A stretch of 56,646 nucleotides of DNA, the filler included, from Platydemus manokwari (taxonomy: Eukaryota), in assembly GCA_037951405.1 (NCBI GenBank). It is 5 parts of 5 records of this genome, joined end to end, with 100 filler letters (N's around TTAATTAATTAA, not from the genome) between each part and the next. Parts side by side here need not be neighbours in the genome. Positions count along the whole stretch, not along the records: positions 1 to 10,310 come from JBBMOY011146327.1; 4 more parts are not named here. One strand, given 5' to 3'. Shown piece after piece: positions 1 to 9,778 of this stretch. How positions within the stretch are numbered: the first letter of the stretch is position 1; each line of letters begins with the position of its first letter. The notes under the pieces are model-generated. The model had not been told where the DNA came from. It made no database searches and saw nothing but the letters and a program-made list of their open reading frames with translations. The position numbers were made by a program, and so were the translations under genes.

Positions 1-345
1 ATCAAATGTCAGCGCTGCGGAGTCGATACTCACGCCACATCTGAATGTACACTTCGGGGACTGGAATGTACCAAGTGTAACCGCAAAGGACATCTCGAGA
101 AAATCTGCAGATCAGCCGCTTTCACAAAGGAACGAGACGAGGTGAACACTCAAGGGAAAATTAAGTGCTTCACTTGTGGAAAATTTGGACACGTACAACG
201 ATCTTGCCCCAGCAATCAAGGGACCGACAAGCCAACAGCTGAAAAAGTCATGATGGCTCAAACTCTGCCCGCATATGAAGAGTGGACTCGGATGCAACAG
301 TTAGAACATGAATACTTGGAGGAAGTGAACCGCAAACTCACCTAA
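1..345 (+). CDS. gag: Gag nucleocapsid C-terminus with three CX2CX4HX4C zinc knuckles (5' partial)
   Basis: Frame +1 from base 1 reads IKCQRCGVDTHATSEC-TLRGLE-CTKCNRKGHLEKIC...IKCFTCGKFGHVQRSCP, ending at TAA 343-345. Confidence 0.85.
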   Translation: MKCQRCGVDTHATSECTLRGLECTKCNRKGHLEKICRSAAFTKERDEVNTQGKIKCFTCGKFGHVQRSCPSNQGTDKPTAEKVMMAQTLPAYEEWTRMQQLEHEYLEEVNRKLT

Positions 346-1660
346 AGCATCTACGCGAACGGTGTTTAGTCTATCAAGAGGCTATCCGAAAGGGGAACCA
401 TACCAACCCTCCCTGGATCATTCATACGCTCAGTCTAGTGGCACCAGCTCAAGCAGCTCCGCCACTTATCTGAAACTGATTTATACGTTAGAAGAAGCAC
501 GGGCTCTTCTAACAGTTAAAATAAATAATTATATGCAACTCACTCCGTCAAGAGAGCAAACAGAAACTTCTAATGAGTTACAAACTCCATGCATATCACC
601 GATAATCATGCGAGCCGAGAAAGCGTATACATGCAACGAGTATGAAGAAGAAGCCGACACTACCCAGGTAGTCGAAACGTGGGAAATCGAAGAAATTTCC
701 AAAGAAAAAGCAAATGAAGCTAAACCAAGTCTCACGCAAGTAATCACTGCTGAAAATGTGCTTGCAACAATTGAACTAACAGCTGAGGAACAATCAACTT
801 TGACTCAGTTCGCTCGCAATTTATTAAGAGAAGCTCAAAGGAATCCGCAAGACGAGCAGATGATCAAGAGTATCTTAAGTAATCACATTTACACCACTAT
901 ACCTACCGATGTATTGGCTGCCACCGCACCAATACTGGTTGAACTATTGGATAAGGGAGCCATTTACCGAAAGGAGGTACAGTTACTCCTACAGCGAAAT
1001 GGGCTAGCCATTCGGAGTCAACCGCAAGGAGCACCGATGCTCAATCTACACATTCGAACCAGTCATCACGGGAACTGGCTCAAGACATACTCTTGCTTCA
1101 CATACGTTCGCAAACTCAGACAGGACATTAGACAAGAAAAATCAATTACGGAACCATTCATCATCACAATTCAATCGAATCCGGTAGATGATGACGAATA
1201 TTTAGTTGACGTAGGCTGCTTACCAGACTTCGTTACAGTGGTAAAAGTACTGATAACGCCAGTGGAATCCAAACAATGGAGACGGATACCCACACTGTCC
1301 AAGGCAGAAATCGAGCCAGAAACGGGAAGAGTGGAGACACAGTTGCCAGTAGACTTAGATGTGGAACCACAGGAAACATCTCAATTCATGGACTACCAGC
1401 CAGAGTATGATCCACAACCATCTCCACCACCACCAGAACCGATCGTCGATGAAGTTATCGAAATAGTGGACCTCGATCCACCAGCTAATAAAATCAGTCA
1501 GAATCATGAGGAAATCATACAAGAGATAGAAAATCCTCCTCCAAAACCAGATCCACCAATTGTGCCAACGCAGGACACTAGTGGACCACCGCGGAAACGA
1601 AGAAACAGAGACACACATGCCCGCACCAACAGTCAGGTACAAGCACAGCTGCTACGATGA
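329..1660 (+). CDS. Retroelement accessory/polyprotein region of unknown function (acidic and Pro-rich segments, basic RKRR motif)
   Basis: Frame +2 is open from 329 to TGA 1658-1660 (432 aa from GTG 362). The same frame continues past the stop. No RT, RNase H or integrase motifs seen. Confidence 0.6.
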   Translation, partial: TANSPKASTRTVFSLSRGYPKGEPYQPSLDHSYAQSSGTSSSSSATYLKLIYTLEEARALLTVKINNYMQLTPSREQTETSNELQTPCISPIIMRAEKAYTCNEYEEEADTTQVVETWEIEEISKEKANEAKPSLTQVITAENVLATIELTAEEQSTLTQFARNLLREAQRNPQDEQMIKSILSNHIYTTIPTDVLAATAPILVELLDKGAIYRKEVQLLLQRNGLAIRSQPQGAPMLNLHIRTSHHGNWLKTYSCFTYVRKLRQDIRQEKSITEPFIITIQSNPVDDDEYLVDVGCLPDFVTVVKVLITPVESKQWRRIPTLSKAEIEPETGRVETQLPVDLDVEPQETSQFMDYQPEYDPQPSPPPPEPIVDEVIEIVDLDPPANKISQNHEEIIQEIENPPPKPDPPIVPTQDTSGPPRKRRNRDTHARTNSQVQAQLLR

Positions 1661-2113
1661 CTGGCGGATGATACAACCATAAACTCCAAACAAGACATCC
1701 AGCAATGTCTCTTGCGAATTGCTAAAGGGATTGATCCCTATAACCAACGCTTGACAGAAGTAACTACCGAGGGTTACGAAAAGCTACTCAATGACATAAG
1801 CAGATACATGCCTAGGATTCGACAGATCACACATGATCATCCCATCGTTGATTCAGAAAACGTGTTATGGGAAATTATCAAATACGGAGTTACTGCATCA
1901 AGAGCTAAGATCATATTGATCAATTTGGCCAACAAAATCATGATGGCGTCATACGGAGACACATTACACTACCAGGAAACATTGCAACAGACGGTCAAAT
2001 TAGCTCATCGAACCATAGGAAAATGGATTCAAACGCAAGGAGGATGGACTCAGTTCGGTTACACCGAGTCACTCACCGCAGAAGGACTAGGTAACCTCAA
2101 CAATAATGGATTA
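1661..2113 (+). CDS. Bcl-2-like domain
   Basis: BH1-like NVLWEIIKYGVTASR (cf. TVVEELFRDGVNWGR) and BH2 HRTIGKWIQTQGGWTQF (cf. NRHLHTWIQDNGGWDAF). The BH1 Arg to BH2 Trp spacing is 41 aa, close to Bcl-2, and a hydrophobic segment follows. Confidence 0.7.
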
Positions 2114-2368
2114 ATGAACACATTAATAAAAGTTATACTCATATGCAGCTTGATTGGAAAAACATCTATGCTCACCGCATATGATTGTTCAAACCCCAAG
2201 CTATCCACCATCTATTCGTTAGTTGATCTGTTCGAATGCCCAGCAGTCAATGTCAACAGTGTCAGACAGGGGCCACGAGAGTCCTTTTATGTGTACCAGG
2301 AATTAGAATTCGACCGAACTACAATCAGGGAATGTAGGGTCACGAAGGCCACATTTTTACTGATCTGA
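2114..2368 (+). CDS. env: Envelope glycoprotein N-terminus, chuvirus/Jingchuvirales-like (class III-type), truncated
   Basis: Signal-peptide-like MNTLIKVILICSLIGKTSMLT, then AYDC..YSLVDLFECP..VYQELEF..IRECRV. This matches the AYDC-x-SLxDVxxC-x-Q..F..xxxCxV pattern of chuvirus-derived glycoproteins found in invertebrate retroelements. Confidence 0.7.
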   Translation: MNTLIKVILICSLIGKTSMLTAYDCSNPKLSTIYSLVDLFECPAVNVNSVRQGPRESFYVYQELEFDRTTIRECRVTKATFLLI

Positions 2369-2389
2369 TAAAACTGACTATATTCATAA

Positions 2390-2590
2390 ATTTGTGCTTT
2401 TATTATTATTTTTAATATTATTATTATTATATTGTTATTATTATTATTATCGTTATTATTCTTTATGTAATAATTAATATTATTCTTATCTGATTATCAA
2501 TATTATTATCATTATCACATCTTATTATTATTATTAATACTATTATTATTACTCGAGTACCTTTTATTATTTATTTTGTTATTATTATTT
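2390..2590. repeat. Degenerate (ATT)n microsatellite
   Basis: Runs of ttattattatt. Confidence 0.85.
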
Positions 2591-4766
2591 TAAATTTGTT
2601 CCACTCTATCGTTTCCTTCGATTTACAATTTGAAAGAATACTCAAAATCATTATTATGTATTGAACTAACCGCAGCATTTTGAACCAACTAAAACAACCC
2701 AAAAAATAAATATAAATTGATATAACATTTTTTAAATAAGTTACAAATCCGAAAAATAACGTCAAAAATTATAAATATTTCATTAAAATACAAAAAACCA
2801 AATGTGTTTTAATATTATCTAAAATAGTATTTGTTTAACTACTTCAAAATAGTTAATTATCATTGCAACCTCATTGTCATGAAAAATTGTTCAGCAAATA
2901 TTTTTGGCAACTGCGTTATTCCCAAAAATAAATCATCCCAATTTGGTTTCATAATCGACTTTATTTGTGGGTTGTCACTATTTTTAGCATTGACGTGTAA
3001 GAGTTGCTAATAATAGCAACCTATTTGAGCAAATTAACTTAAATTGCACACAAAGCATTCCAAACAAGTATAAAAGCAGAGAGCCACAGGAAGACATTGC
3101 ACAATTACGACGTACTTGTATAACCTTATAAAAATTTAGCAATTCGAAGAAATTTAACTTTGAAGCTATTTTATTATATACCAATTTCAATCCGAAGAAT
3201 TTGAATAGTGACAAAACTTGATGTATTTAATGAGTATTATTAATTGTTTAATTAAATCTAGACCGTTGATAATTTTAACCTTGTGGTCCTTTAAAATCTA
3301 TAGGTTCAACTTCAAGGTCCCCACTTTCATTTTATCTTGACAGGCTTGCTCAAGCACCTAAGCTCCATGCCCTTTACTGTTTCTTGGCCACTATTCTGCT
3401 TCAACAATAGCGATCATCATCTTGTAATATTATAAAATTATTGTGTTTAGATAATTAATTATTGTCGATTAATTCATTTCATTTTGTTATATTTTTGCCT
3501 TTATTCATTATATTTTATTTGATTATCATACATATTTAAAAATTATTTTGCATTATGTTTTCCGAGCGTTTAAGCAACAACAACTTCTTACCTGACTGGA
3601 ATTCAGATAGGATGAAGATTTTTGGGTGAATATATTTAACTTTATCGTAATTCAAAATCCTTCTGATAATAATAACCGTATTAGTTTACATATTTTTACC
3701 AATTGAACATTCGTAATCTAAACTTATAATTGTTATAAACCGCCTCAGCAATCTTTAACAATTATACGCTATAACATACAGTAATTACTCAGTAAGGATA
3801 AAGATAATAAAACACAGAAAAGTTATTTTGTCATAATCAATAATAAAACACATAAAATAAAATATTAATTTGTCACAACTAATGTTGAGATGTGAGCTAT
3901 AATTAAACTTTGGATATTGAAACTCGCTTGGGTTTGGGAATTCCGTAAAAGAGTCTCAACGAATATTGGGTAATTGCTCAGGCTTGGAATTTGTGGTTAA
4001 ATAATATTGGAAGATTTTTGGAGTGATCGAATTTTTTGGAATTAAGATTTTAGAATGATTGGTTGTCGAGTAATGGAATTATCAGATTGTTTGGGACAAG
4101 GTATTTGATGTATTAATTGATTGAATTGGGATATTGTTGTTCTGAGTTTTGGGGTGTTTGATGTATTGGGTATTGATTAAGAATTTAGAGGTGTTCTGGA
4201 TTTATTGATTGATGATGTGTTTTAGATTATGTGTATCCACAACATTCACAGTCATCGGAGTTCTTTCCCAATATGCTACTCGAGTTTGTCTGTTTCTTAT
4301 TAACATTAACAAAATAATGAATTCTGGGTTATTAATATTAATATTAATAATTATAAATTCATTAAATATTTATTATTGGATTATAATATTGCATAGACTT
4401 GTCACTGATTTTAAGTTATTACAAAATTTCCTTTAATATTAATTAGGTATAATTATTAGGTATAATAATTCAAAGTTTTTAAACTAGATTTCATTAAAAG
4501 ATTTTTAATAAAATGTTTACTAGAATTAAAAAATAATTCTTTATTAAATTAAAAAAATTAATTTATTTTCTTGATTGATAAAATTATTTATATTCGCTAT
4601 AAAATTAATAAATTTGTTAAGATGAATGTACTACAGTGTTAAATCTTGAAACTATTTACTCAAATTGTTTAAATATATACTGGTCTTTGGTAACAAGGCT
4701 GTTGATATTTTAAATTTAAAAACACAAGCTTATACTTGAAATACATAAAATATATTACTTTAAAGG

Positions 4767-7700
4767 ATGGAAGCTGATAAGTTAGAATTGATTAAATGCC
4801 GTAATATTGAGGTAATGTGATACAATTTCAAAATTTAACTTTACTAATACATCAGTTGGAAGAGCAATTGAAATTATGCCAAAATGATTTAAAAAAGAAA
4901 GACGATCATATCAAAGCTTTATCTAGGTAAATTTCAACTTTAAATACGTTTATTGACAGAGTTATAAAGTATGGAAATAAAACGAAGCAGTTCTGACAGT
5001 TCGGATTCTATTCAAACGAAAGCCGAATTAGCATCGATACAGTTACAATTGAGTAATGTTATGCAGAAGGTATTGTTGACAATTTTCATTGGTGAAAACA
5101 ATATTTGATCACAATTTCATTGAAAGCTGGAAGAATATGAAATCAATATCAAAAGTAAAGCCGAACAAGTTCAAGAATTGCAAGCTTCGAATCGCAATCT
5201 TAATGAACAATTGGATAAATTTATTGCCAAAGAATCGGAGCTTCAAGCTAGTTTAACTGCTGCTGAGAAATTATCTAATGAAATGAGCTGTGCCAATTCA
5301 AGAAGCGAGTTGGTAATTGTTTCCTTGCAAAAAGAATTAACGGAATTCACTGAGAAAATTATCGAACTGGAACAGCAAATAAAGTAATCGACAAATCGGA
5401 TTAGTTGTTATTTGACGAATATCTTGACTGAATTCAGAGATCTCACCATCACGAAGAGTTCGTCCGATCATTCTCACGAAATGTTGACAGTGAAAATCAA
5501 TGAATTCTACTCCAATCTCACGATGCATTTGAACGTTGAATCGGATTCCGAACCGAATACGGTATTTGAAAAGGTGCAACAGTTGGACAAAACCGTCTCG
5601 TTTATTTGATTTTGCGATATTTTTCAGGTTAAACATTTGACCAGCGAAAACAATCAATTGAAAGGTGAGATCGATAATTTGAAAACAACGGCCAAAGAAC
5701 GAGAGGAGAAATTTTTGGAAAGTCGAGAATCAATGAGAAAAATGATGCAAAACATCGATAAAGACAAAGGAAATCTTGAAGATTATATTCGAATGAAACG
5801 CGAAATGACATTCGTAAGGCAACATGGCCAGGAGAGATTTGATTGGTTAATGAATATTTGGTTTTTTGTAGGAAATCGAGAAGATTAATGCGGAGAAGAA
5901 ATCGATGGAAATGAAGAGTTCCGAACTGGAAAACCAGTTAATCGACACGAAAAAGATTCTCGAAGAAACCAAGAAAATTCTCGAGGACAAAGAAGCCCAA
6001 TTGGCTAAGATTTATTTGGAGAAACGCGAGTCTAATTTCAGCATGGTAAATGTTAGTAGGGAACTCGATGGTTTCAAAGAATCAATAGCAGGCCTTCTAG
6101 GAAACCCTTTGAATCGATGTTCACCGACGGAAGAAGCCATTAAAGAACGATTAAAGAGTCTCATTCAGGAAGCGAAAGAAAAGGATAATGTGAGATGGAT
6201 AGATTGTTAGATTAAATAATCTCATTGTCTTTGGGCTGTAGTCGATATCCGTTCTCAATGTAAAATTGAAAAATGTTTCCGAACAGTATGAGAAACAATA
6301 TGAGAACTCAAAGGAAACTGGTTTGAAAGCACGTCGAGTGGAATTGGAATATCTGGATTTAACAGAACGCATTCGTCAGTTGGAAAAGGAGCTGTCTTCG
6401 AGAGATGTTACTCGAGACTCATTAAGAGCAGAAAAGGAAAAGGTTTCCAATCTCAATTTTGTATTCGATTACTTATATTTGTTTGTCGATTTAGTTCTAC
6501 CATTTTCTAAGACGACTGGCAACGACATTTAAAATGGATCCGTACACTCACGAACAAGATTTTTCCTTGATTTTCGATGGTATTCTCGGTAAATGTTGAG
6601 AGATAGGTAGCTGAGTAGAATGATTTTTCACAAATTTATTTTCAGATCGAGCATCTCATCTGGTTCACAGCGAAAATGAAAAGAATATTGATACTAGTCA
6701 AACGATATCCTCTTTAAAGAAGCGACTTCGAGATGTGAAAGACCAATTGCATAGCCGGGATTTGCATTTGGAAATGATGAGAAAGAAATTGGCGAACCAA
6801 GACGACAAGATTCGAGAAGCTTATGAAGAAGTGGATCAGAAACGGGATTTAGTGGACAGTGAAGAAACTTTGAAGGTGAAACTGTCCAAGATACAGAAAA
6901 AAGTTGAACAGCTGAGAAACGAAAATAAAGTTTTGAAAGCCGAGCTCTTTGAATGTTCGGATATCAAGGTAAAAATACTGTTTATTGATTTCTCTATTTG
7001 AGATTATTATTAATATTTTATATTTGTTATGATTTTGGGGGGGGTATGCTAATATGGTGCTGGATTTCCTAACCAAGTAATAAGGGTGATTGTAGTTAAG
7101 TAACAGTGGCTCTCGTTTAGAATACATCAATTTCATTTCCTTTACAATGATAATGATTATAATTATTGTTGGTTATTGAAAATATGTTTGATATAAACAT
7201 TTATTTATTAAATTACATGTGCTGGTTAACTCATTTCAATGCAAATATCAATAAGTAACACGTCATCTGTCTTCAACTGGCTTTATCTAGTTGCGACATT
7301 TATAAACGAGAATTTGTCCATGCTCAATTTCTAAATGATGTTATCATTTCCAAGGATCAAATTAGAGTTATCTATTCATACCAAGTTTTTATTATGTCGT
7401 CGCGTAGCAGTGTATTTTGTTTCAAATCGAAATTTTTGTTCTAAATTGATTCTGATTGATCGGTGATCCACTTTGTATGATTGTGTAGACATGCGTGTAT
7501 GTAAAATATCGAGACATGGGTTCAAAGATGATGAAAATTATTGTTATGTGGTACTATTATAATTATAATTTGGAGTTAAATTTATAAATTAATCACCAAG
7601 TTATTCTACCAAATTGAATTATTTCTATTTGAAATATTTATAGCTATTAACTTCCTCCAAATTCTAATTATCAATATATAAGTTACCTGCAAGACTTTAA

Positions 7701-9778
7701 AACATGGGTAACCAAGAGTGTAAGAAGTGAATAAATTCGTGTTATCATTAATATAACGGTTCTAATAAACACTCGGAAGATATACATTTAAACCCATTAG
7801 AAATATGCTATTATTAAATGGACAAAGAAATAATTGGAATGGAAGGCCAAATATAAATAGTATTAGTATAAGCTTGCACAAAAATTCACGCATTAAAGAA
7901 AATTTCGAAGGCGAGTAATAAGCAAACATTTTGCGCATAATCAATAAGTTCCAGTCAATCGATTAAATGACTCTCGTAACTTTCAATTCAATTTTCTACC
8001 TTATAAATTATAATCATGCAAAACTAATCTTATTTTATGGTTAACAGCATCTACTAAAATTTCTTGCAATAAGAAATATTCATCAAATCCTTTTTCTAGT
8101 TTATCAATCGACTATTTCATTAATTTTGAAATCGAGTCTGTATAGCTGCCATTAGACAGTGCTATTTTGCTAACAATATCCATTATCCTTATAGCAAGCC
8201 AGCCTTCAAATAACAATAATATATACAAAACAAATTTGTTATTCATATTTATGTATTCTGTTTTCAAGAAGAAAAATTTACTTGTCAATTGCCTCATTAA
8301 TTATTTATCATATTTTTATTTATACACACGCGAACTATTTTCCGAGAAGTCTCAAATTCATAGTGTGATATATATAATCGAATAATATCAAGTTTCAATA
8401 TATTTAATTAAAATATTTTTATAGATATTATCGATAGTCAATTGTGATTGAATCAACTGACTTATAAAACTCCGCCAATGTGTTAAATGATATTTTTACA
8501 CTTTTATTAAGTGTCTATATGCATTACGACTCCTAAATCTAACCTAGATCTAATTATTTATCTAGAGTTAACAAATTTTAGTAACTTTCAATAAGATGCA
8601 TGAGGAACCATGATGGTCATCGCAGAGCAATTATTTAGAAATAGTGAGAATACACAAGGTAACAGTCGCAATATTTTAAACTCTAAATTGATTTTACTAT
8701 TGAATAGGAGAGACAACGAGAAATATTGTGAGATAATCACTACTCCTGTGTTTGCAAAGACTATGCTTTCCACTGATGATCCCTAAATTTTATAAAAACC
8801 TGGTTCATTCTTGTTATCCAAATATCCAAATTAAAATCCAAAGATTTCCAAATTAATTTTCTATTTTCTACGGTTAATTTTTAATTTTATTGTGGGTGAA
8901 AATGATCAGTTTGATGAATTAAAATAGGTCATATTGTCATTCAATCTACTTTTATGATGTTTGTTTTGTTATATGTTAGTTAGATCCAATAACTGTTAAT
9001 CACATGTTTTCAAAAATTTTATTAGTAGCTATTACTGATGATCGCTTAAACTCAATTTGATGTTCTTTGTTAACTTTAATATTTTATAATGTGATTCTCT
9101 GTTGAGTTGTCAAAAATTTTTAGATAATTTTTTCTAATTTCTATTCCATTAATTCAGAGAGCAGCCTCAAATCAGAACAAAGAATTGGAAACATTGCAAC
9201 ATAATTTGCAAAAGCTTGAGCGAGTGCGACAAAAACAAGCTGAAAAAATTGCCGAATTCACTAAAAATAATGACAAGTTTGAATTTGAAGCCAATCAATC
9301 CAGATTTGTGGCCGAGAATGCTGTTCAGTCGCTTACAACGGAAATGAAGACTTTGAGAAGTTCATTAGAACGAGCAAGAAGATCTGAAAAAGAGGTTTTT
9401 TACAATCACTTTTGTAGCGATTATACTGATTGATTTGTATTTAGTTATTGGATTTCCGGGCTGTAGTTGGTCGCATCATTGGTCTGTGTGTAGATGATTT
9501 GGCCATTCCTAACTATGATATTATACGTCGACTTGAAAAATTAGTTTCAGTACCAAGGTCTGGATTCACTGTGGCGGTACCAGTCCCGCATTACCCCGCA
9601 AAGAACGGTACAATTAATTGAGTGATGGGTTAGGATTAATGCACTTTTAGGCTATGAAGATGCAAGTAGACTGCTTGGAAGAAAAAGAATGAGTCCAAAT
9701 CGCACTTTGAATCAGGATGCAATACGACCTCGATCTGTGTCTCCAATTCATGAGACTCGTGATTCAAGAAAATATTAA
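4767..9778 (+). CDS. CCDC170: Coiled-coil domain-containing protein 170-like; exons 4767-4811, 4856-4926, 4970-5069, 5127-5383, 5438-5573, 5628-5813, 5872-6189, 6242-6442, 6495-6588, 6646-6968, 9158-9394, 9445-9607, 9651-9778
   Basis: GT-AG introns join the ORF pieces in frame. The protein is heptad-rich. RDLHLEMMRKKL and LLDFRAVVGRIIGLCVDDLAIPNYDIIRRLEKL resemble the CCDC170 C-terminus. The start codon is tentative. Confidence 0.8.

What the first reader, a model, noticed from the sequence alone, without database searches (positions are those of the whole stretch)
1661..2368. Retroelement polyprotein with a Bcl-2-like domain fused directly to a chuvirus-type envelope glycoprotein
Seen: one reading frame downstream of Gag knuckles carries BH1-like (VLWEIIKYGVTASR, 1862-1903) and BH2 (WIQTQGGWTQF, 2024-2056) motifs at Bcl-2 spacing, then a hydrophobic stretch, then AYDC..SLVDLFEC..ECRV. 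Known: viral Bcl-2 homologs are typical of large DNA viruses (herpes-, pox-, adeno-, asfarviruses), and chuvirus glycoproteins have been captured as env by invertebrate LTR elements. Inference: this is an enveloped, possibly once-infectious retroelement that captured a host apoptosis regulator to keep infected cells alive. From memory, giant planarian Ty3/Gypsy 'Burro' elements carry captured accessory domains, so novelty must be checked against them.
Basis: partly seen in the sequence, partly recalled or inferred. Interest (0 to 1): 0.92.

Follow-up and report, generated by a model that had tools for sequence, protein, structure and literature searches.

The report
Broken Burro-like retroelement with Bcl-2 domain
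This is a dead, cut-off copy of a virus-like retrotransposon whose single long protein carries a cell-death regulator (Bcl-2-like) domain directly in front of a viral fusion glycoprotein, which is a real and striking design but one already published for the giant 'Burro' elements of planarian flatworms.

Summary
All quoted motifs sit at the stated coordinates in one frame. Four lines of evidence support a Bcl-2 domain, each modest alone. A profile of the window plus 10 relatives finds almost only Bcl-xL/A1 in the PDB (best E 0.003). Pfam Bcl-2 matches 7 of 18 family members at the same place (best 7.7e-5, none reaching the curated cut-off). One relative alone finds only Bcl-xL/Bcl-2. An AlphaFold model finds only Bcl-2-family folds. 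The AYDC segment is the start of a Monjiviricetes-type fusion glycoprotein, PF24664, seen in 16 of 18 members. In relatives, knuckles, Bcl-2-like domain, glycoprotein, proteases, RT and integrase overlap in continuous ORFs.

It is not new. Arkhipova and Yushenova 2019 (PMC6431247) describe this order, Gag with CCHC knuckles, SUMO-like, BCL2, mononegavirus-like env in frame, then PR-RT-IN, for planarian Burro elements. I also found the SUMO-like fold upstream and three knuckles.

The window copy is broken. It keeps about 63 codons of env, then AT-rich DNA and a host coiled-coil gene follow. The host organism was not identified. The anti-apoptotic role is inference.

The parts
1..2368 (+). Broken, 3'-truncated polyprotein gene of a Burro-like Ty3/Gypsy retroelement (Gag knuckles, SUMO-like, Bcl-2-like, start of env). 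Its 5' end is cut by the edge of the piece.
   Evidence: It is collinear with the continuous ORFs of relatives P0004 and P0005. G+C is 41-48% against 22-30% in the 2.5 kb that follow. Measured against those relatives it has at least one frameshift, one internal in-frame stop and a 3' truncation.
7..207 (+). Three CCHC zinc knuckles (the nucleocapsid part of Gag)
   Evidence: Pfam zf-CCHC E 7.8e-9. Three C-x2-C-x4-H-x4-C motifs lie at 7-48, 67-108 and 166-207. They match the knuckles of P0004 and P0005.
1031..1258 (+). Ubiquitin/SUMO-like beta-grasp domain
   Evidence: In the AlphaFold2 model of 749-1351, residues 95-170 have pLDDT 65-88 and a beta-beta-alpha-beta-beta topology. Foldseek against the PDB gives 102 hits at E<=1e-3, to SUMO1, ISG15 and ubiquitin-like domains, with target TM 0.8-0.87 and rmsd about 2 A. 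Sequence alone found nothing in Pfam. The region is conserved with P0005 (E 1.4e-9).
1673..2056 (+). Bcl-2-like helical domain, with a BH1-like region around 1862-1920 and BH2 (W-x3-GGW) at 2024-2056
   Evidence: The A2 profile against the PDB puts Bcl-xL/A1 at the top (best E 0.0033). Pfam Bcl-2 hits 7 of 18 members. The AlphaFold2 model has pLDDT 67 overall and 67-87 over residues 61-130. All top 50 Foldseek PDB hits are Bcl-2 family (probability 0.97-1.00, TM 0.38-0.56).
2105..2176 (+). Hydrophobic segment, read as the internal signal peptide or signal anchor of the glycoprotein. It lies where the tail anchor lies in Bcl-xL.
   Evidence: Every one of 27 family members has a hydrophobic 13-mer starting about 15-32 (mostly 19-25) residues before the glycoprotein start motif, whether or not it has the BH2 signature. 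The best PDB alignment runs on into the Bcl-xL C-terminal anchor.
2177..2365 (+). The first ~63 codons of a Monjiviricetes-type (chuvirus/mononegavirus-like) fusion glycoprotein. The rest is missing.
   Evidence: The segment is 30-44% identical to the N-termini of relatives, whose matches to PF24664 start at profile positions 4-11 in this motif and reach E as low as 2.7e-95. No relative matches the window beyond 2365.
2369..5100 (.). AT-rich non-coding flank (neighbour), with a TTA microsatellite at 2400-2551
   Evidence: G+C is 22-30%. The tandem repeat was found. The region shows no similarity to any part of the related polyproteins.
5178..9621 (+). Exon-like ORFs of a host coiled-coil protein gene (neighbour)
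   Evidence: A series of same-strand ORFs with heptad-rich translations is separated by short gaps. They give only weak coiled-coil Pfam hits. The gene was not identified.

Best explanation
The window holds a decayed, 3'-truncated copy of a Ty3/Gypsy-type LTR retroelement of the Burro kind. Intact relatives overlap to give one giant ORF in the order Gag (CCHC knuckles), a ubiquitin/SUMO-like domain, a Bcl-2-fold domain, a hydrophobic segment, a class Monjiviricetes fusion glycoprotein with its own C-terminal membrane anchor, then two or three aspartyl protease domains, RT, RNase H and integrase. The following steps are inferred and not shown. The hydrophobic segment acts as an internal signal sequence that sends the glycoprotein ectodomain into the ER lumen. 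The Gag-Ubl-Bcl-2 part stays on the cytosolic face, in the orientation of a tail-anchored cellular Bcl-2. The glycoprotein's C-terminal anchor brings PR-RT-IN back to the cytosol. The Bcl-2-like domain, most likely taken from an animal host gene, would then modulate host cell death while the element is expressed. The copy in the window can do none of this. Its frame is broken and about 90% of env and all of pol are gone.
For: Bcl-2 domain. These are profile, Pfam, single-sequence and fold evidence. All point to the same family and the same position, with BH1 and BH2 in register with Bcl-xL. Glycoprotein: PF24664 in 16 of 18 members. One-ORF architecture: P0004 and P0005 have knuckles followed by glycoprotein. 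P0002, P0005, P0021, P0023 and P0030 have glycoprotein followed by proteases. P0023 continues into RT, RNase H and integrase. The Pfam set RVT_1, RT_RNaseH_2, Integrase_H2C2 and rve is the Ty3/Gypsy set (my knowledge of Pfam usage). C-terminal anchors lie ahead of the proteases in the relatives. SUMO-like fold upstream of the Bcl-2 domain. Three knuckles. Published Burro order Gag(CCHC x3)-...-SUMO-like-BCL2-env-PR: PMC6431247. GAG-ENV-POL order in Platyhelminthes: PMC13524379. Truncation. Composition break at the truncation.
Against: No Burro reference sequence was available, so membership rests on domain order and not on direct alignment. Only about 270 residues separate the knuckles from the SUMO-like domain, so the MATH/TRAF, BIR, ankyrin and Smc motifs reported for Burro-1 are absent here. 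The one relative that reaches RT (P0023) shows extra protease domains and no dUTPase hit at E<=0.01. P0023 also lacks the BH2 signature, so no single relative shows the Bcl-2-like domain and RT-integrase together. No Pfam Bcl-2 hit reaches the curated cut-off of 31.4 bits. The AlphaFold model is of medium confidence (pLDDT 67, TM 0.38-0.56). About half of the relatives with enough upstream sequence lack the BH2 signature, so the Bcl-2 domain is not universal in this glycoprotein-carrying group. The host organism is unknown. Membrane topology and any effect on apoptosis are inference only.
Confidence: 0.7

Rival explanations
1. It is a separate GAG-ENV-POL lineage of env-carrying Ty3/Gypsy elements, like those reported in flatworms, nematodes and bryozoans. 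On this reading it is not a true Burro relative and gained its Bcl-2-like and ubiquitin-like domains independently or by recombination.
For: The element is compact, with no MATH, BIR, ankyrin or Smc domains between the knuckles and the SUMO-like domain. Relative P0023 has tandem proteases and no dUTPase hit. GAG-ENV-POL elements are reported to be polyphyletic (PMC13524379). The relatives come from unnamed metagenome contigs, and the best is only 43% identical.
Against: The same three accessory parts occur in the same order (SUMO-like, BCL2, mononegavirus-like env in frame), together with three CCHC knuckles, as published for Burro. That combination is unlikely to arise twice.
Confidence: 0.2
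2. The Bcl-2 likeness is spurious. On this reading the region is just a helical leader of the glycoprotein or of Gag that happens to carry a W-x3-GGW motif.
For: All sequence scores are marginal: the window alone gives E 0.14, the best family member 7.7e-5, and none reaches the Pfam cut-off. The model confidence is medium and rmsd is 6-7 A. Helical bundles are easy to match.
Against: Several routes reach the same family and no other. The first 53 PDB profile hits are all Bcl-xL/A1. All 60 hits shown for the single relative P0008 are Bcl-xL/Bcl-2. All 50 top Foldseek hits are Bcl-2 family. The viral library returns viral Bcl-2s. BH1 and BH2 align in register, with an almost identical BH2. A BCL2 motif at this place was reported independently for Burro.
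Confidence: 0.06
3. It is a host gene or domesticated remnant: a solo Bcl-2-glycoprotein fusion kept by the host, for example as an antiviral or cell-death factor, and not transposon debris.
For: Solo chuvirus-type glycoproteins that may be domesticated are described in mosquitoes (PMC7642597). About 2 kb of frame here holds only one internal stop.
Against: Only about 63 codons of the glycoprotein remain. The frame is broken upstream. Gag knuckles lie directly upstream and collinear with retroelement polyproteins. G+C differs sharply from the flank, as expected for a fairly recent insertion.
Confidence: 0.03

Closest known systems
Burro / GYPSM1 giant Ty3/Gypsy LTR retrotransposons of planarians (Grohme et al. 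2018; Arkhipova and Yushenova 2019, PMC6431247)
   Same: Both have Gag with three CCHC knuckles and a SUMO/ubiquitin-like domain. Both have a BCL2-like motif immediately before an env homologous to mononegavirus-type fusion glycoproteins. In both, env is in frame between gag and pol.
   Different: This element is compact. The MATH/TRAF, BIR, ankyrin and Smc motifs are absent between the knuckles and the SUMO-like domain. The relative that reaches RT shows two to three protease domains and no detected dUTPase. No direct sequence comparison was possible, and the host is unknown. The window copy is a fragment.
GAG-ENV-POL 'errantivirus'-type Ty3/Gypsy elements of Platyhelminthes, Nematoda and Bryozoa (PMC13524379)
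   Same: Env lies between gag and pol. Env is of the class III, gB-like structural kind, to which that paper likens Chuviridae-like glycoproteins. The host range includes flatworms.
   Different: That paper describes separate ORFs and mentions no Bcl-2 or ubiquitin-like domain (one search found no occurrence of 'Bcl'). Here the parts lie in continuous ORFs in the relatives.
Anakin: mosquito BEL/Pao elements with a captured chuvirus glycoprotein (PMC7642597)
   Same: It is a retroelement that captured a Jingchuvirales/Monjiviricetes-type glycoprotein as env.
   Different: The backbone differs. Anakin is BEL/Pao, and the relatives here carry the Ty3/Gypsy Pfam set. No Bcl-2 domain is reported for Anakin in the abstract and sections read here.
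Cellular Bcl-xL / Bcl-2 / A1 and the viral Bcl-2 homologues of herpes-, pox-, irido- and adenoviruses
   Same: The helical fold is predicted to be the same. BH1 and BH2 are in register, BH2 is almost identical to that of Bcl-xL, and a hydrophobic segment follows about 20 residues after BH2.
   Different: Here the domain is embedded in a retroelement polyprotein. The hydrophobic segment leads straight into a glycoprotein ectodomain and does not end the protein. The BH1 signature is degenerate, although a basic residue is kept at the position aligned to the Bcl-xL BH1 arginine in the rows. Whether it is pro- or anti-apoptotic is unknown.

Membership tests
Bcl-2 family (Pfam PF00452) | Sequence match to the family profile at or above the curated cut-off | tested here: not met
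   The window scores 13.2 bits (E 0.14) against a cut-off of 31.4. The best relative, P0022, scores 23.6 bits (E 7.7e-5). Seven of 18 members match at E<=1, all below the cut-off.
Bcl-2 family (Pfam PF00452) | BH1 and BH2 motifs at native spacing | tested here: met
   The family profile aligns to Bcl-xL from BH1 through BH2 with only small gaps. BH2 (W-I-Q-x2-G-G-W-x2-F) is nearly identical, while BH1 is degenerate. The BH2 signature is present in 10 of about 18 relatives that have enough upstream sequence.
Bcl-2 family (Pfam PF00452) | Bcl-2 helical-bundle fold | tested here: met
   The AlphaFold2 model has pLDDT 67 and pTM 0.54. All of the top 50 Foldseek PDB hits are BAK, BCL-2, Bcl-xL, MCL-1 or viral Bcl-2, with probability 0.97-1.00 and TM 0.38-0.56. 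This is medium confidence only.
Bcl-2 family (Pfam PF00452) | Binding of BH3 ligands and regulation of cell death | not testable with these tools
   No computation here addresses this activity.
Monjiviricetes fusion glycoprotein (Pfam PF24664; includes chuvirus-type G) | Match to the family profile | tested here: inconclusive
   The window keeps only about 63 residues and gives no direct Pfam hit. Those residues are 30-44% identical to the N-termini of relatives that match PF24664 with E down to 2.7e-95, from profile positions 4-11 onward.
Monjiviricetes fusion glycoprotein (Pfam PF24664; includes chuvirus-type G) | Specifically chuvirus (Jingchuvirales) and not mononegavirus origin | tested here: inconclusive
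   No named viral protein came back. Some relatives give weak secondary hits to Borna disease virus G and herpesvirus gB.
Burro-type Ty3/Gypsy elements | Gag with CCHC knuckles (three in S. mediterranea) | tested here: met
   There are three knuckles at 7-207.
Burro-type Ty3/Gypsy elements | SUMO/ubiquitin-like domain upstream of the BCL2 motif | tested here: met
   A beta-grasp fold at about 1031-1258 matches SUMO1 and ISG15. One member also gives a weak Pfam ubiquitin hit (E 0.031).
Burro-type Ty3/Gypsy elements | BCL2 motif followed by a mononegavirus-like env, in frame between gag and pol | tested here: met
   In the window this is seen as far as the copy goes. Overlapping relatives show it in full: P0004 and P0005 for knuckles to glycoprotein, P0002, P0005, P0021, P0023 and P0030 for glycoprotein to proteases, and P0023 for RT to integrase.
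Burro-type Ty3/Gypsy elements | Giant ORF1 with MATH/TRAF, BIR, ankyrin and Smc motifs | tested here: not met
   The 432 codons between the knuckles and the Bcl-2-like part give no Pfam hit, and there is room for only about 270 residues before the SUMO-like domain. The literature reports these motifs for Burro-1/GYPSM1 and also for Burro-2, -3 and -4.
Burro-type Ty3/Gypsy elements | dUTPase between PR and RT | tested here: inconclusive
   This part is missing from the window. Relative P0023 shows protease-like domains there and no dUTPase hit at E<=0.01.
Burro-type Ty3/Gypsy elements | Direct sequence homology to the Burro references, and a planarian host | not testable with these tools
The AT-rich flank and short intron-like gaps fit a flatworm but are not diagnostic.
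Anakin (BEL/Pao with chuvirus G) | BEL/Pao-type pol | tested here: not met
   Relative P0023 carries RVT_1, RT_RNaseH_2, Integrase_H2C2 and rve. P0005 hits the Ty3 peptidase family. No Pao peptidase was found.

The most novel reading that the evidence does not exclude
The Bcl-2-plus-glycoprotein module may not be confined to giant planarian Burro elements. It may mark a wider, old lineage of compact GAG-ENV-POL retroelements: at least nine divergent sequences from unnamed environmental assemblies carry it. In that lineage one hydrophobic segment would serve both as the tail anchor of a Gag-Ubl-Bcl-2 product and as the signal peptide of Env. A single polyprotein would then be threaded through the ER membrane in the manner of a flavivirus polyprotein.
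Probability: 0.25. Interest if true: 0.6.

Novelty: new member of a known kind. Interest (0 to 1): 0.33.

Why it matters
A Bcl-2 homologue inside a retroelement is rare, because such homologues are otherwise known from large DNA viruses. Together with an in-frame viral fusion glycoprotein, it suggests a retrovirus-like agent of invertebrates that handles both cell entry and host cell survival from one polyprotein. That idea is already in the literature for Burro. This window adds a compact, broken example. The relatives add a hint that the module occurs in many divergent elements. They also add a testable topological model, in which the glycoprotein's signal peptide sits where the Bcl-2 tail anchor would be. 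The window copy itself has no likely function.

Tried and rejected
Searches limited by length, using the 235-residue piece, the 432-residue upstream piece and relative P0008, returned nothing named. The cluster look-up gave only unnamed ENA, Logan and JGI contigs. An exact look-up of the window's upstream ORF found no record. The organism therefore stays unknown.

Grohme et al. 2018 is not held in the library, so details of Burro-2, -3 and -4 come second-hand from PMC6431247. The Troyka paper was checked and is irrelevant, because those elements have no env. Repeat, tRNA and Rfam scans of the window gave nothing useful, and no LTR or primer-binding site lies within the piece. The solved-structure search found no sequence relative of the glycoprotein part.

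I did not fetch DNA loci of full-length relatives (search for related loci, or the look-up of encoding contigs on the relatives). The protein-level ORFs were sufficient.

- It has not been repeated or deleted.

Full report
**1. The observation**

The frame 1661-2368 translates without a stop into 235 residues.
- BH1-like at 1862-1903
- BH2-like at 2024-2056
- AYDC at 2177-2188
- SLVDLFEC at 2216-2239
- ECRV at 2330-2341

A hydrophobic stretch lies at about 2105-2176. Three CCHC zinc knuckles lie upstream at 7-48, 67-108 and 166-207.

**2. The Bcl-2-like part**

The window's piece alone gives only a weak Pfam Bcl-2 hit (E 0.14, 13 bits, curated cut-off 31.4) and nothing useful in the PDB. A word-indexed search limited to proteins of 130-411 residues found nothing. 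The exhaustive search of 1.84 billion cluster representatives found 28 relatives at E<=1e-3. Several of these extend upstream of the glycoprotein start into the Bcl-2-like region.

Four lines of evidence then agree:
- **Profile against the PDB.** A profile built from the window's 1661-2176 and ten relatives (alignment A2) returns Bcl-xL and A1/Bfl-1 as its first 53 hits, with a best E of 0.0033. The printed alignment runs from BH1 through a nearly identical BH2 and on into the C-terminal anchor of full-length Bcl-xL.
- **Pfam on the relatives.** Pfam Bcl-2 matches 7 of 18 aligned members, always ending at the last profile position some 40-80 residues before the glycoprotein start. The best E is 7.7e-5 in P0022, and none reaches the curated cut-off.
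- **One relative alone.** P0008 searched against the PDB returns only Bcl-xL and Bcl-2, with E about 0.01.
- **Predicted fold.** An AlphaFold2 model made on A2 has mean pLDDT 67, pTM 0.54, and 67-87 over residues 61-130. All of its top 50 Foldseek hits in the PDB are Bcl-2 family structures (BAK, BCL-2, Bcl-xL, MCL-1, poxvirus and KSHV Bcl-2), with probability 0.97-1.00 and TM 0.38-0.56. In the viral library most of the top hits are Bcl-2 homologues of herpes-, irido-, pox- and adenoviruses, at weaker scores.

Each line is modest, but together they make a Bcl-2 fold the only reasonable reading. Cellular Bcl-xL scores better than any viral homologue. That fits capture from an animal host, although the PDB is biased towards human proteins.

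**3. The glycoprotein part**

The window keeps only about 63 residues after the hydrophobic segment, which is too few for a direct Pfam hit. These residues are 30-44% identical to the N-termini of the relatives. In 16 of 18 members that region begins a match to PF24664, 'Monjiviricetes_fusion, viral fusion glycoprotein', with E as low as 2.7e-95 over about 600 profile positions. Some members give weak secondary hits to Borna disease virus G and herpesvirus gB.

No named virus came back, so chuvirus and mononegavirus origins cannot be separated.

**4. Architecture in the relatives**

The relatives are unnamed ORF products from ENA, Logan and JGI assemblies. They are less than 50% identical to one another, so they sample an old group. 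Their Pfam content is as follows:
- **P0004 and P0005:** CCHC knuckles, then several hundred residues, then the glycoprotein.
- **P0002, P0005, P0021, P0023 and P0030:** the glycoprotein, followed in the same ORF by two or three aspartyl protease domains.
- **P0023:** continues into RT, RNase H and integrase with the Ty3/Gypsy set of Pfam families.

The glycoproteins have a C-terminal hydrophobic anchor ahead of the proteases. The overlapping relatives together give the order Gag, accessory domains, Bcl-2-like, Env, PR, RT, RH, IN in continuous frames. No single relative shows both the Bcl-2 signature and RT.

The Bcl-2 signature is not universal. Ten of about eighteen members with enough upstream sequence have the GGW motif, and eight do not. 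By contrast, all 27 members with a recognisable glycoprotein start have a hydrophobic 13-mer starting about 15-32 (mostly 19-25) residues before it. That segment is therefore best read as the glycoprotein's own signal peptide. It now lies about 20 residues after BH2, where the tail anchor lies in Bcl-xL.

**5. What lies upstream in the window**

The 432 codons between the knuckles and the Bcl-2-like part have no Pfam hit and no length-matched homologues. They are collinear with P0005 (E 1.4e-9). An AlphaFold2 model of 749-1351 is poor overall (pLDDT 57) but confident (65-88) over residues 95-170, which form a beta-grasp. Foldseek matches that part to SUMO1, ISG15 and other ubiquitin-like domains: 102 hits at E<=1e-3, target TM 0.8-0.87 and rmsd about 2 A. 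A ubiquitin/SUMO-like domain therefore lies at about 1031-1258.

**6. State of the window copy**

Measured against the continuous ORFs of P0004 and P0005, the window copy has:
- at least one frameshift
- one internal in-frame stop
- a 3' truncation

No relative matches anything in the window beyond 2365 on either strand. About nine tenths of env and all of PR, RT, RH and IN are therefore absent. The 5' end is cut by the edge of the piece.

At the truncation, G+C falls from 41-48% to 22-30% and a TTA microsatellite follows. From about 5178 to 9621 a row of same-strand ORFs with coiled-coil translations looks like the exons of a host gene. The element's distinct composition, and about 2 kb of frame with a single internal stop, suggest that the insertion is not very old. 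That is inference. I cannot exclude that the frame change after the knuckles is a natural feature of this element and not decay.

**7. Comparison with what is known**

Arkhipova and Yushenova 2019 (PMC6431247) report the following for planarian Burro elements:
- Gag has three (Schmidtea mediterranea) or two (Dugesia tigrina) CCHC knuckles.
- A BCL2-like motif was also noted by Grohme et al. 2018 in Burro-2, -3 and -4.
[quoted passage not shown] - The apoptosis- and ubiquitin-related domains may 'meddle' with host systems.

The window shows the same parts in the same order. It differs in being compact: there is no room for the MATH/TRAF, BIR, ankyrin and Smc motifs between the knuckles and the SUMO-like domain. 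The one relative that reaches RT shows extra proteases and no detected dUTPase.

Chary and Hayashi (PMC13524379) report GAG-ENV-POL elements with gB-like env in Platyhelminthes, Nematoda and Bryozoa, and they liken Chuviridae-like glycoproteins structurally to gB. They mention no Bcl-2. Anakin (PMC7642597) is a BEL/Pao element with a chuvirus glycoprotein, which is a different backbone.

I could not obtain a Burro sequence or the organism's name. Membership therefore rests on domain order, and I file this as a new, compact and broken member of a known kind.

**8. Mechanism**

Shown:
- the domain identities
- their order
- their continuity in the relatives' ORFs
- the position of the hydrophobic segments

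Inferred:
- The internal signal peptide sends Env into the ER.
- Gag-Ubl-Bcl-2 stays on the cytosolic face in the orientation of a tail-anchored Bcl-2.
- The Env anchor returns PR-RT-IN to the cytosol.
- The Bcl-2-like domain modulates host cell death.

Whether the domain would act for or against apoptosis cannot be told. The structural hits include both BAK and the pro-survival members.

**9. Slips and omissions**

I did not repeat it, and nothing was deleted. I also recalled a few Bcl-xL motif letters from memory in my reasoning before the tool supplied them. None went to a tool. Consensus lines printed by the alignment tools were not used.

**10. Verdict**

However, the architecture is already published and this copy is a dead fragment. 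Interest is 0.33.

Noticed in passing
window 1031-1258 (+): A ubiquitin/SUMO-like beta-grasp domain that Pfam cannot see by sequence. It showed up only in the predicted fold, and it lies between the Gag knuckles and the Bcl-2-like domain.
   Followed up: yes
window about 1380-1650 (+): A proline- and acid-rich, low-complexity linker ends in a short basic cluster (RKRRNR) just before the Bcl-2-like domain. It could be a nuclear-localisation-like or processing motif.
   Followed up: no
relatives P0002, P0005, P0021, P0023, P0030 (protein level): Two or three aspartyl protease domains lie in tandem after env and before RT. This is unusual for Ty3/Gypsy elements, which normally have one.
   Followed up: partly
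relatives P0013 and P0017 (protein level): Short N-terminal glycoprotein fragments lie in one predicted ORF with ordinary cellular domains (FAD-oxidase C-terminal domain; mitochondrial ribosomal protein L47). They are probably element fragments next to or within host genes, or gene-call chimeras.
   Followed up: no
relatives P0005, P0010, P0014, P0021, P0023, P0024, P0027, P0028: About half of the glycoprotein-carrying relatives with enough upstream sequence lack the BH2 (GGW) signature. The Bcl-2-like domain has therefore been lost, has diverged beyond recognition, or was never present in part of the group.
   Followed up: partly
window 2369-2600: G+C drops abruptly from about 44% to 23% exactly where homology to the element ends. 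A TTA microsatellite (2400-2551) and a 23-base tandem repeat follow.
   Followed up: partly
window 5178-9621 (+): A row of same-strand ORFs with coiled-coil translations is separated by gaps of about 25-200 bases, and two more lie at 9185-9621. They look like exons of a host structural gene. Only weak coiled-coil Pfam hits were found, and the gene was not identified.
   Followed up: partly
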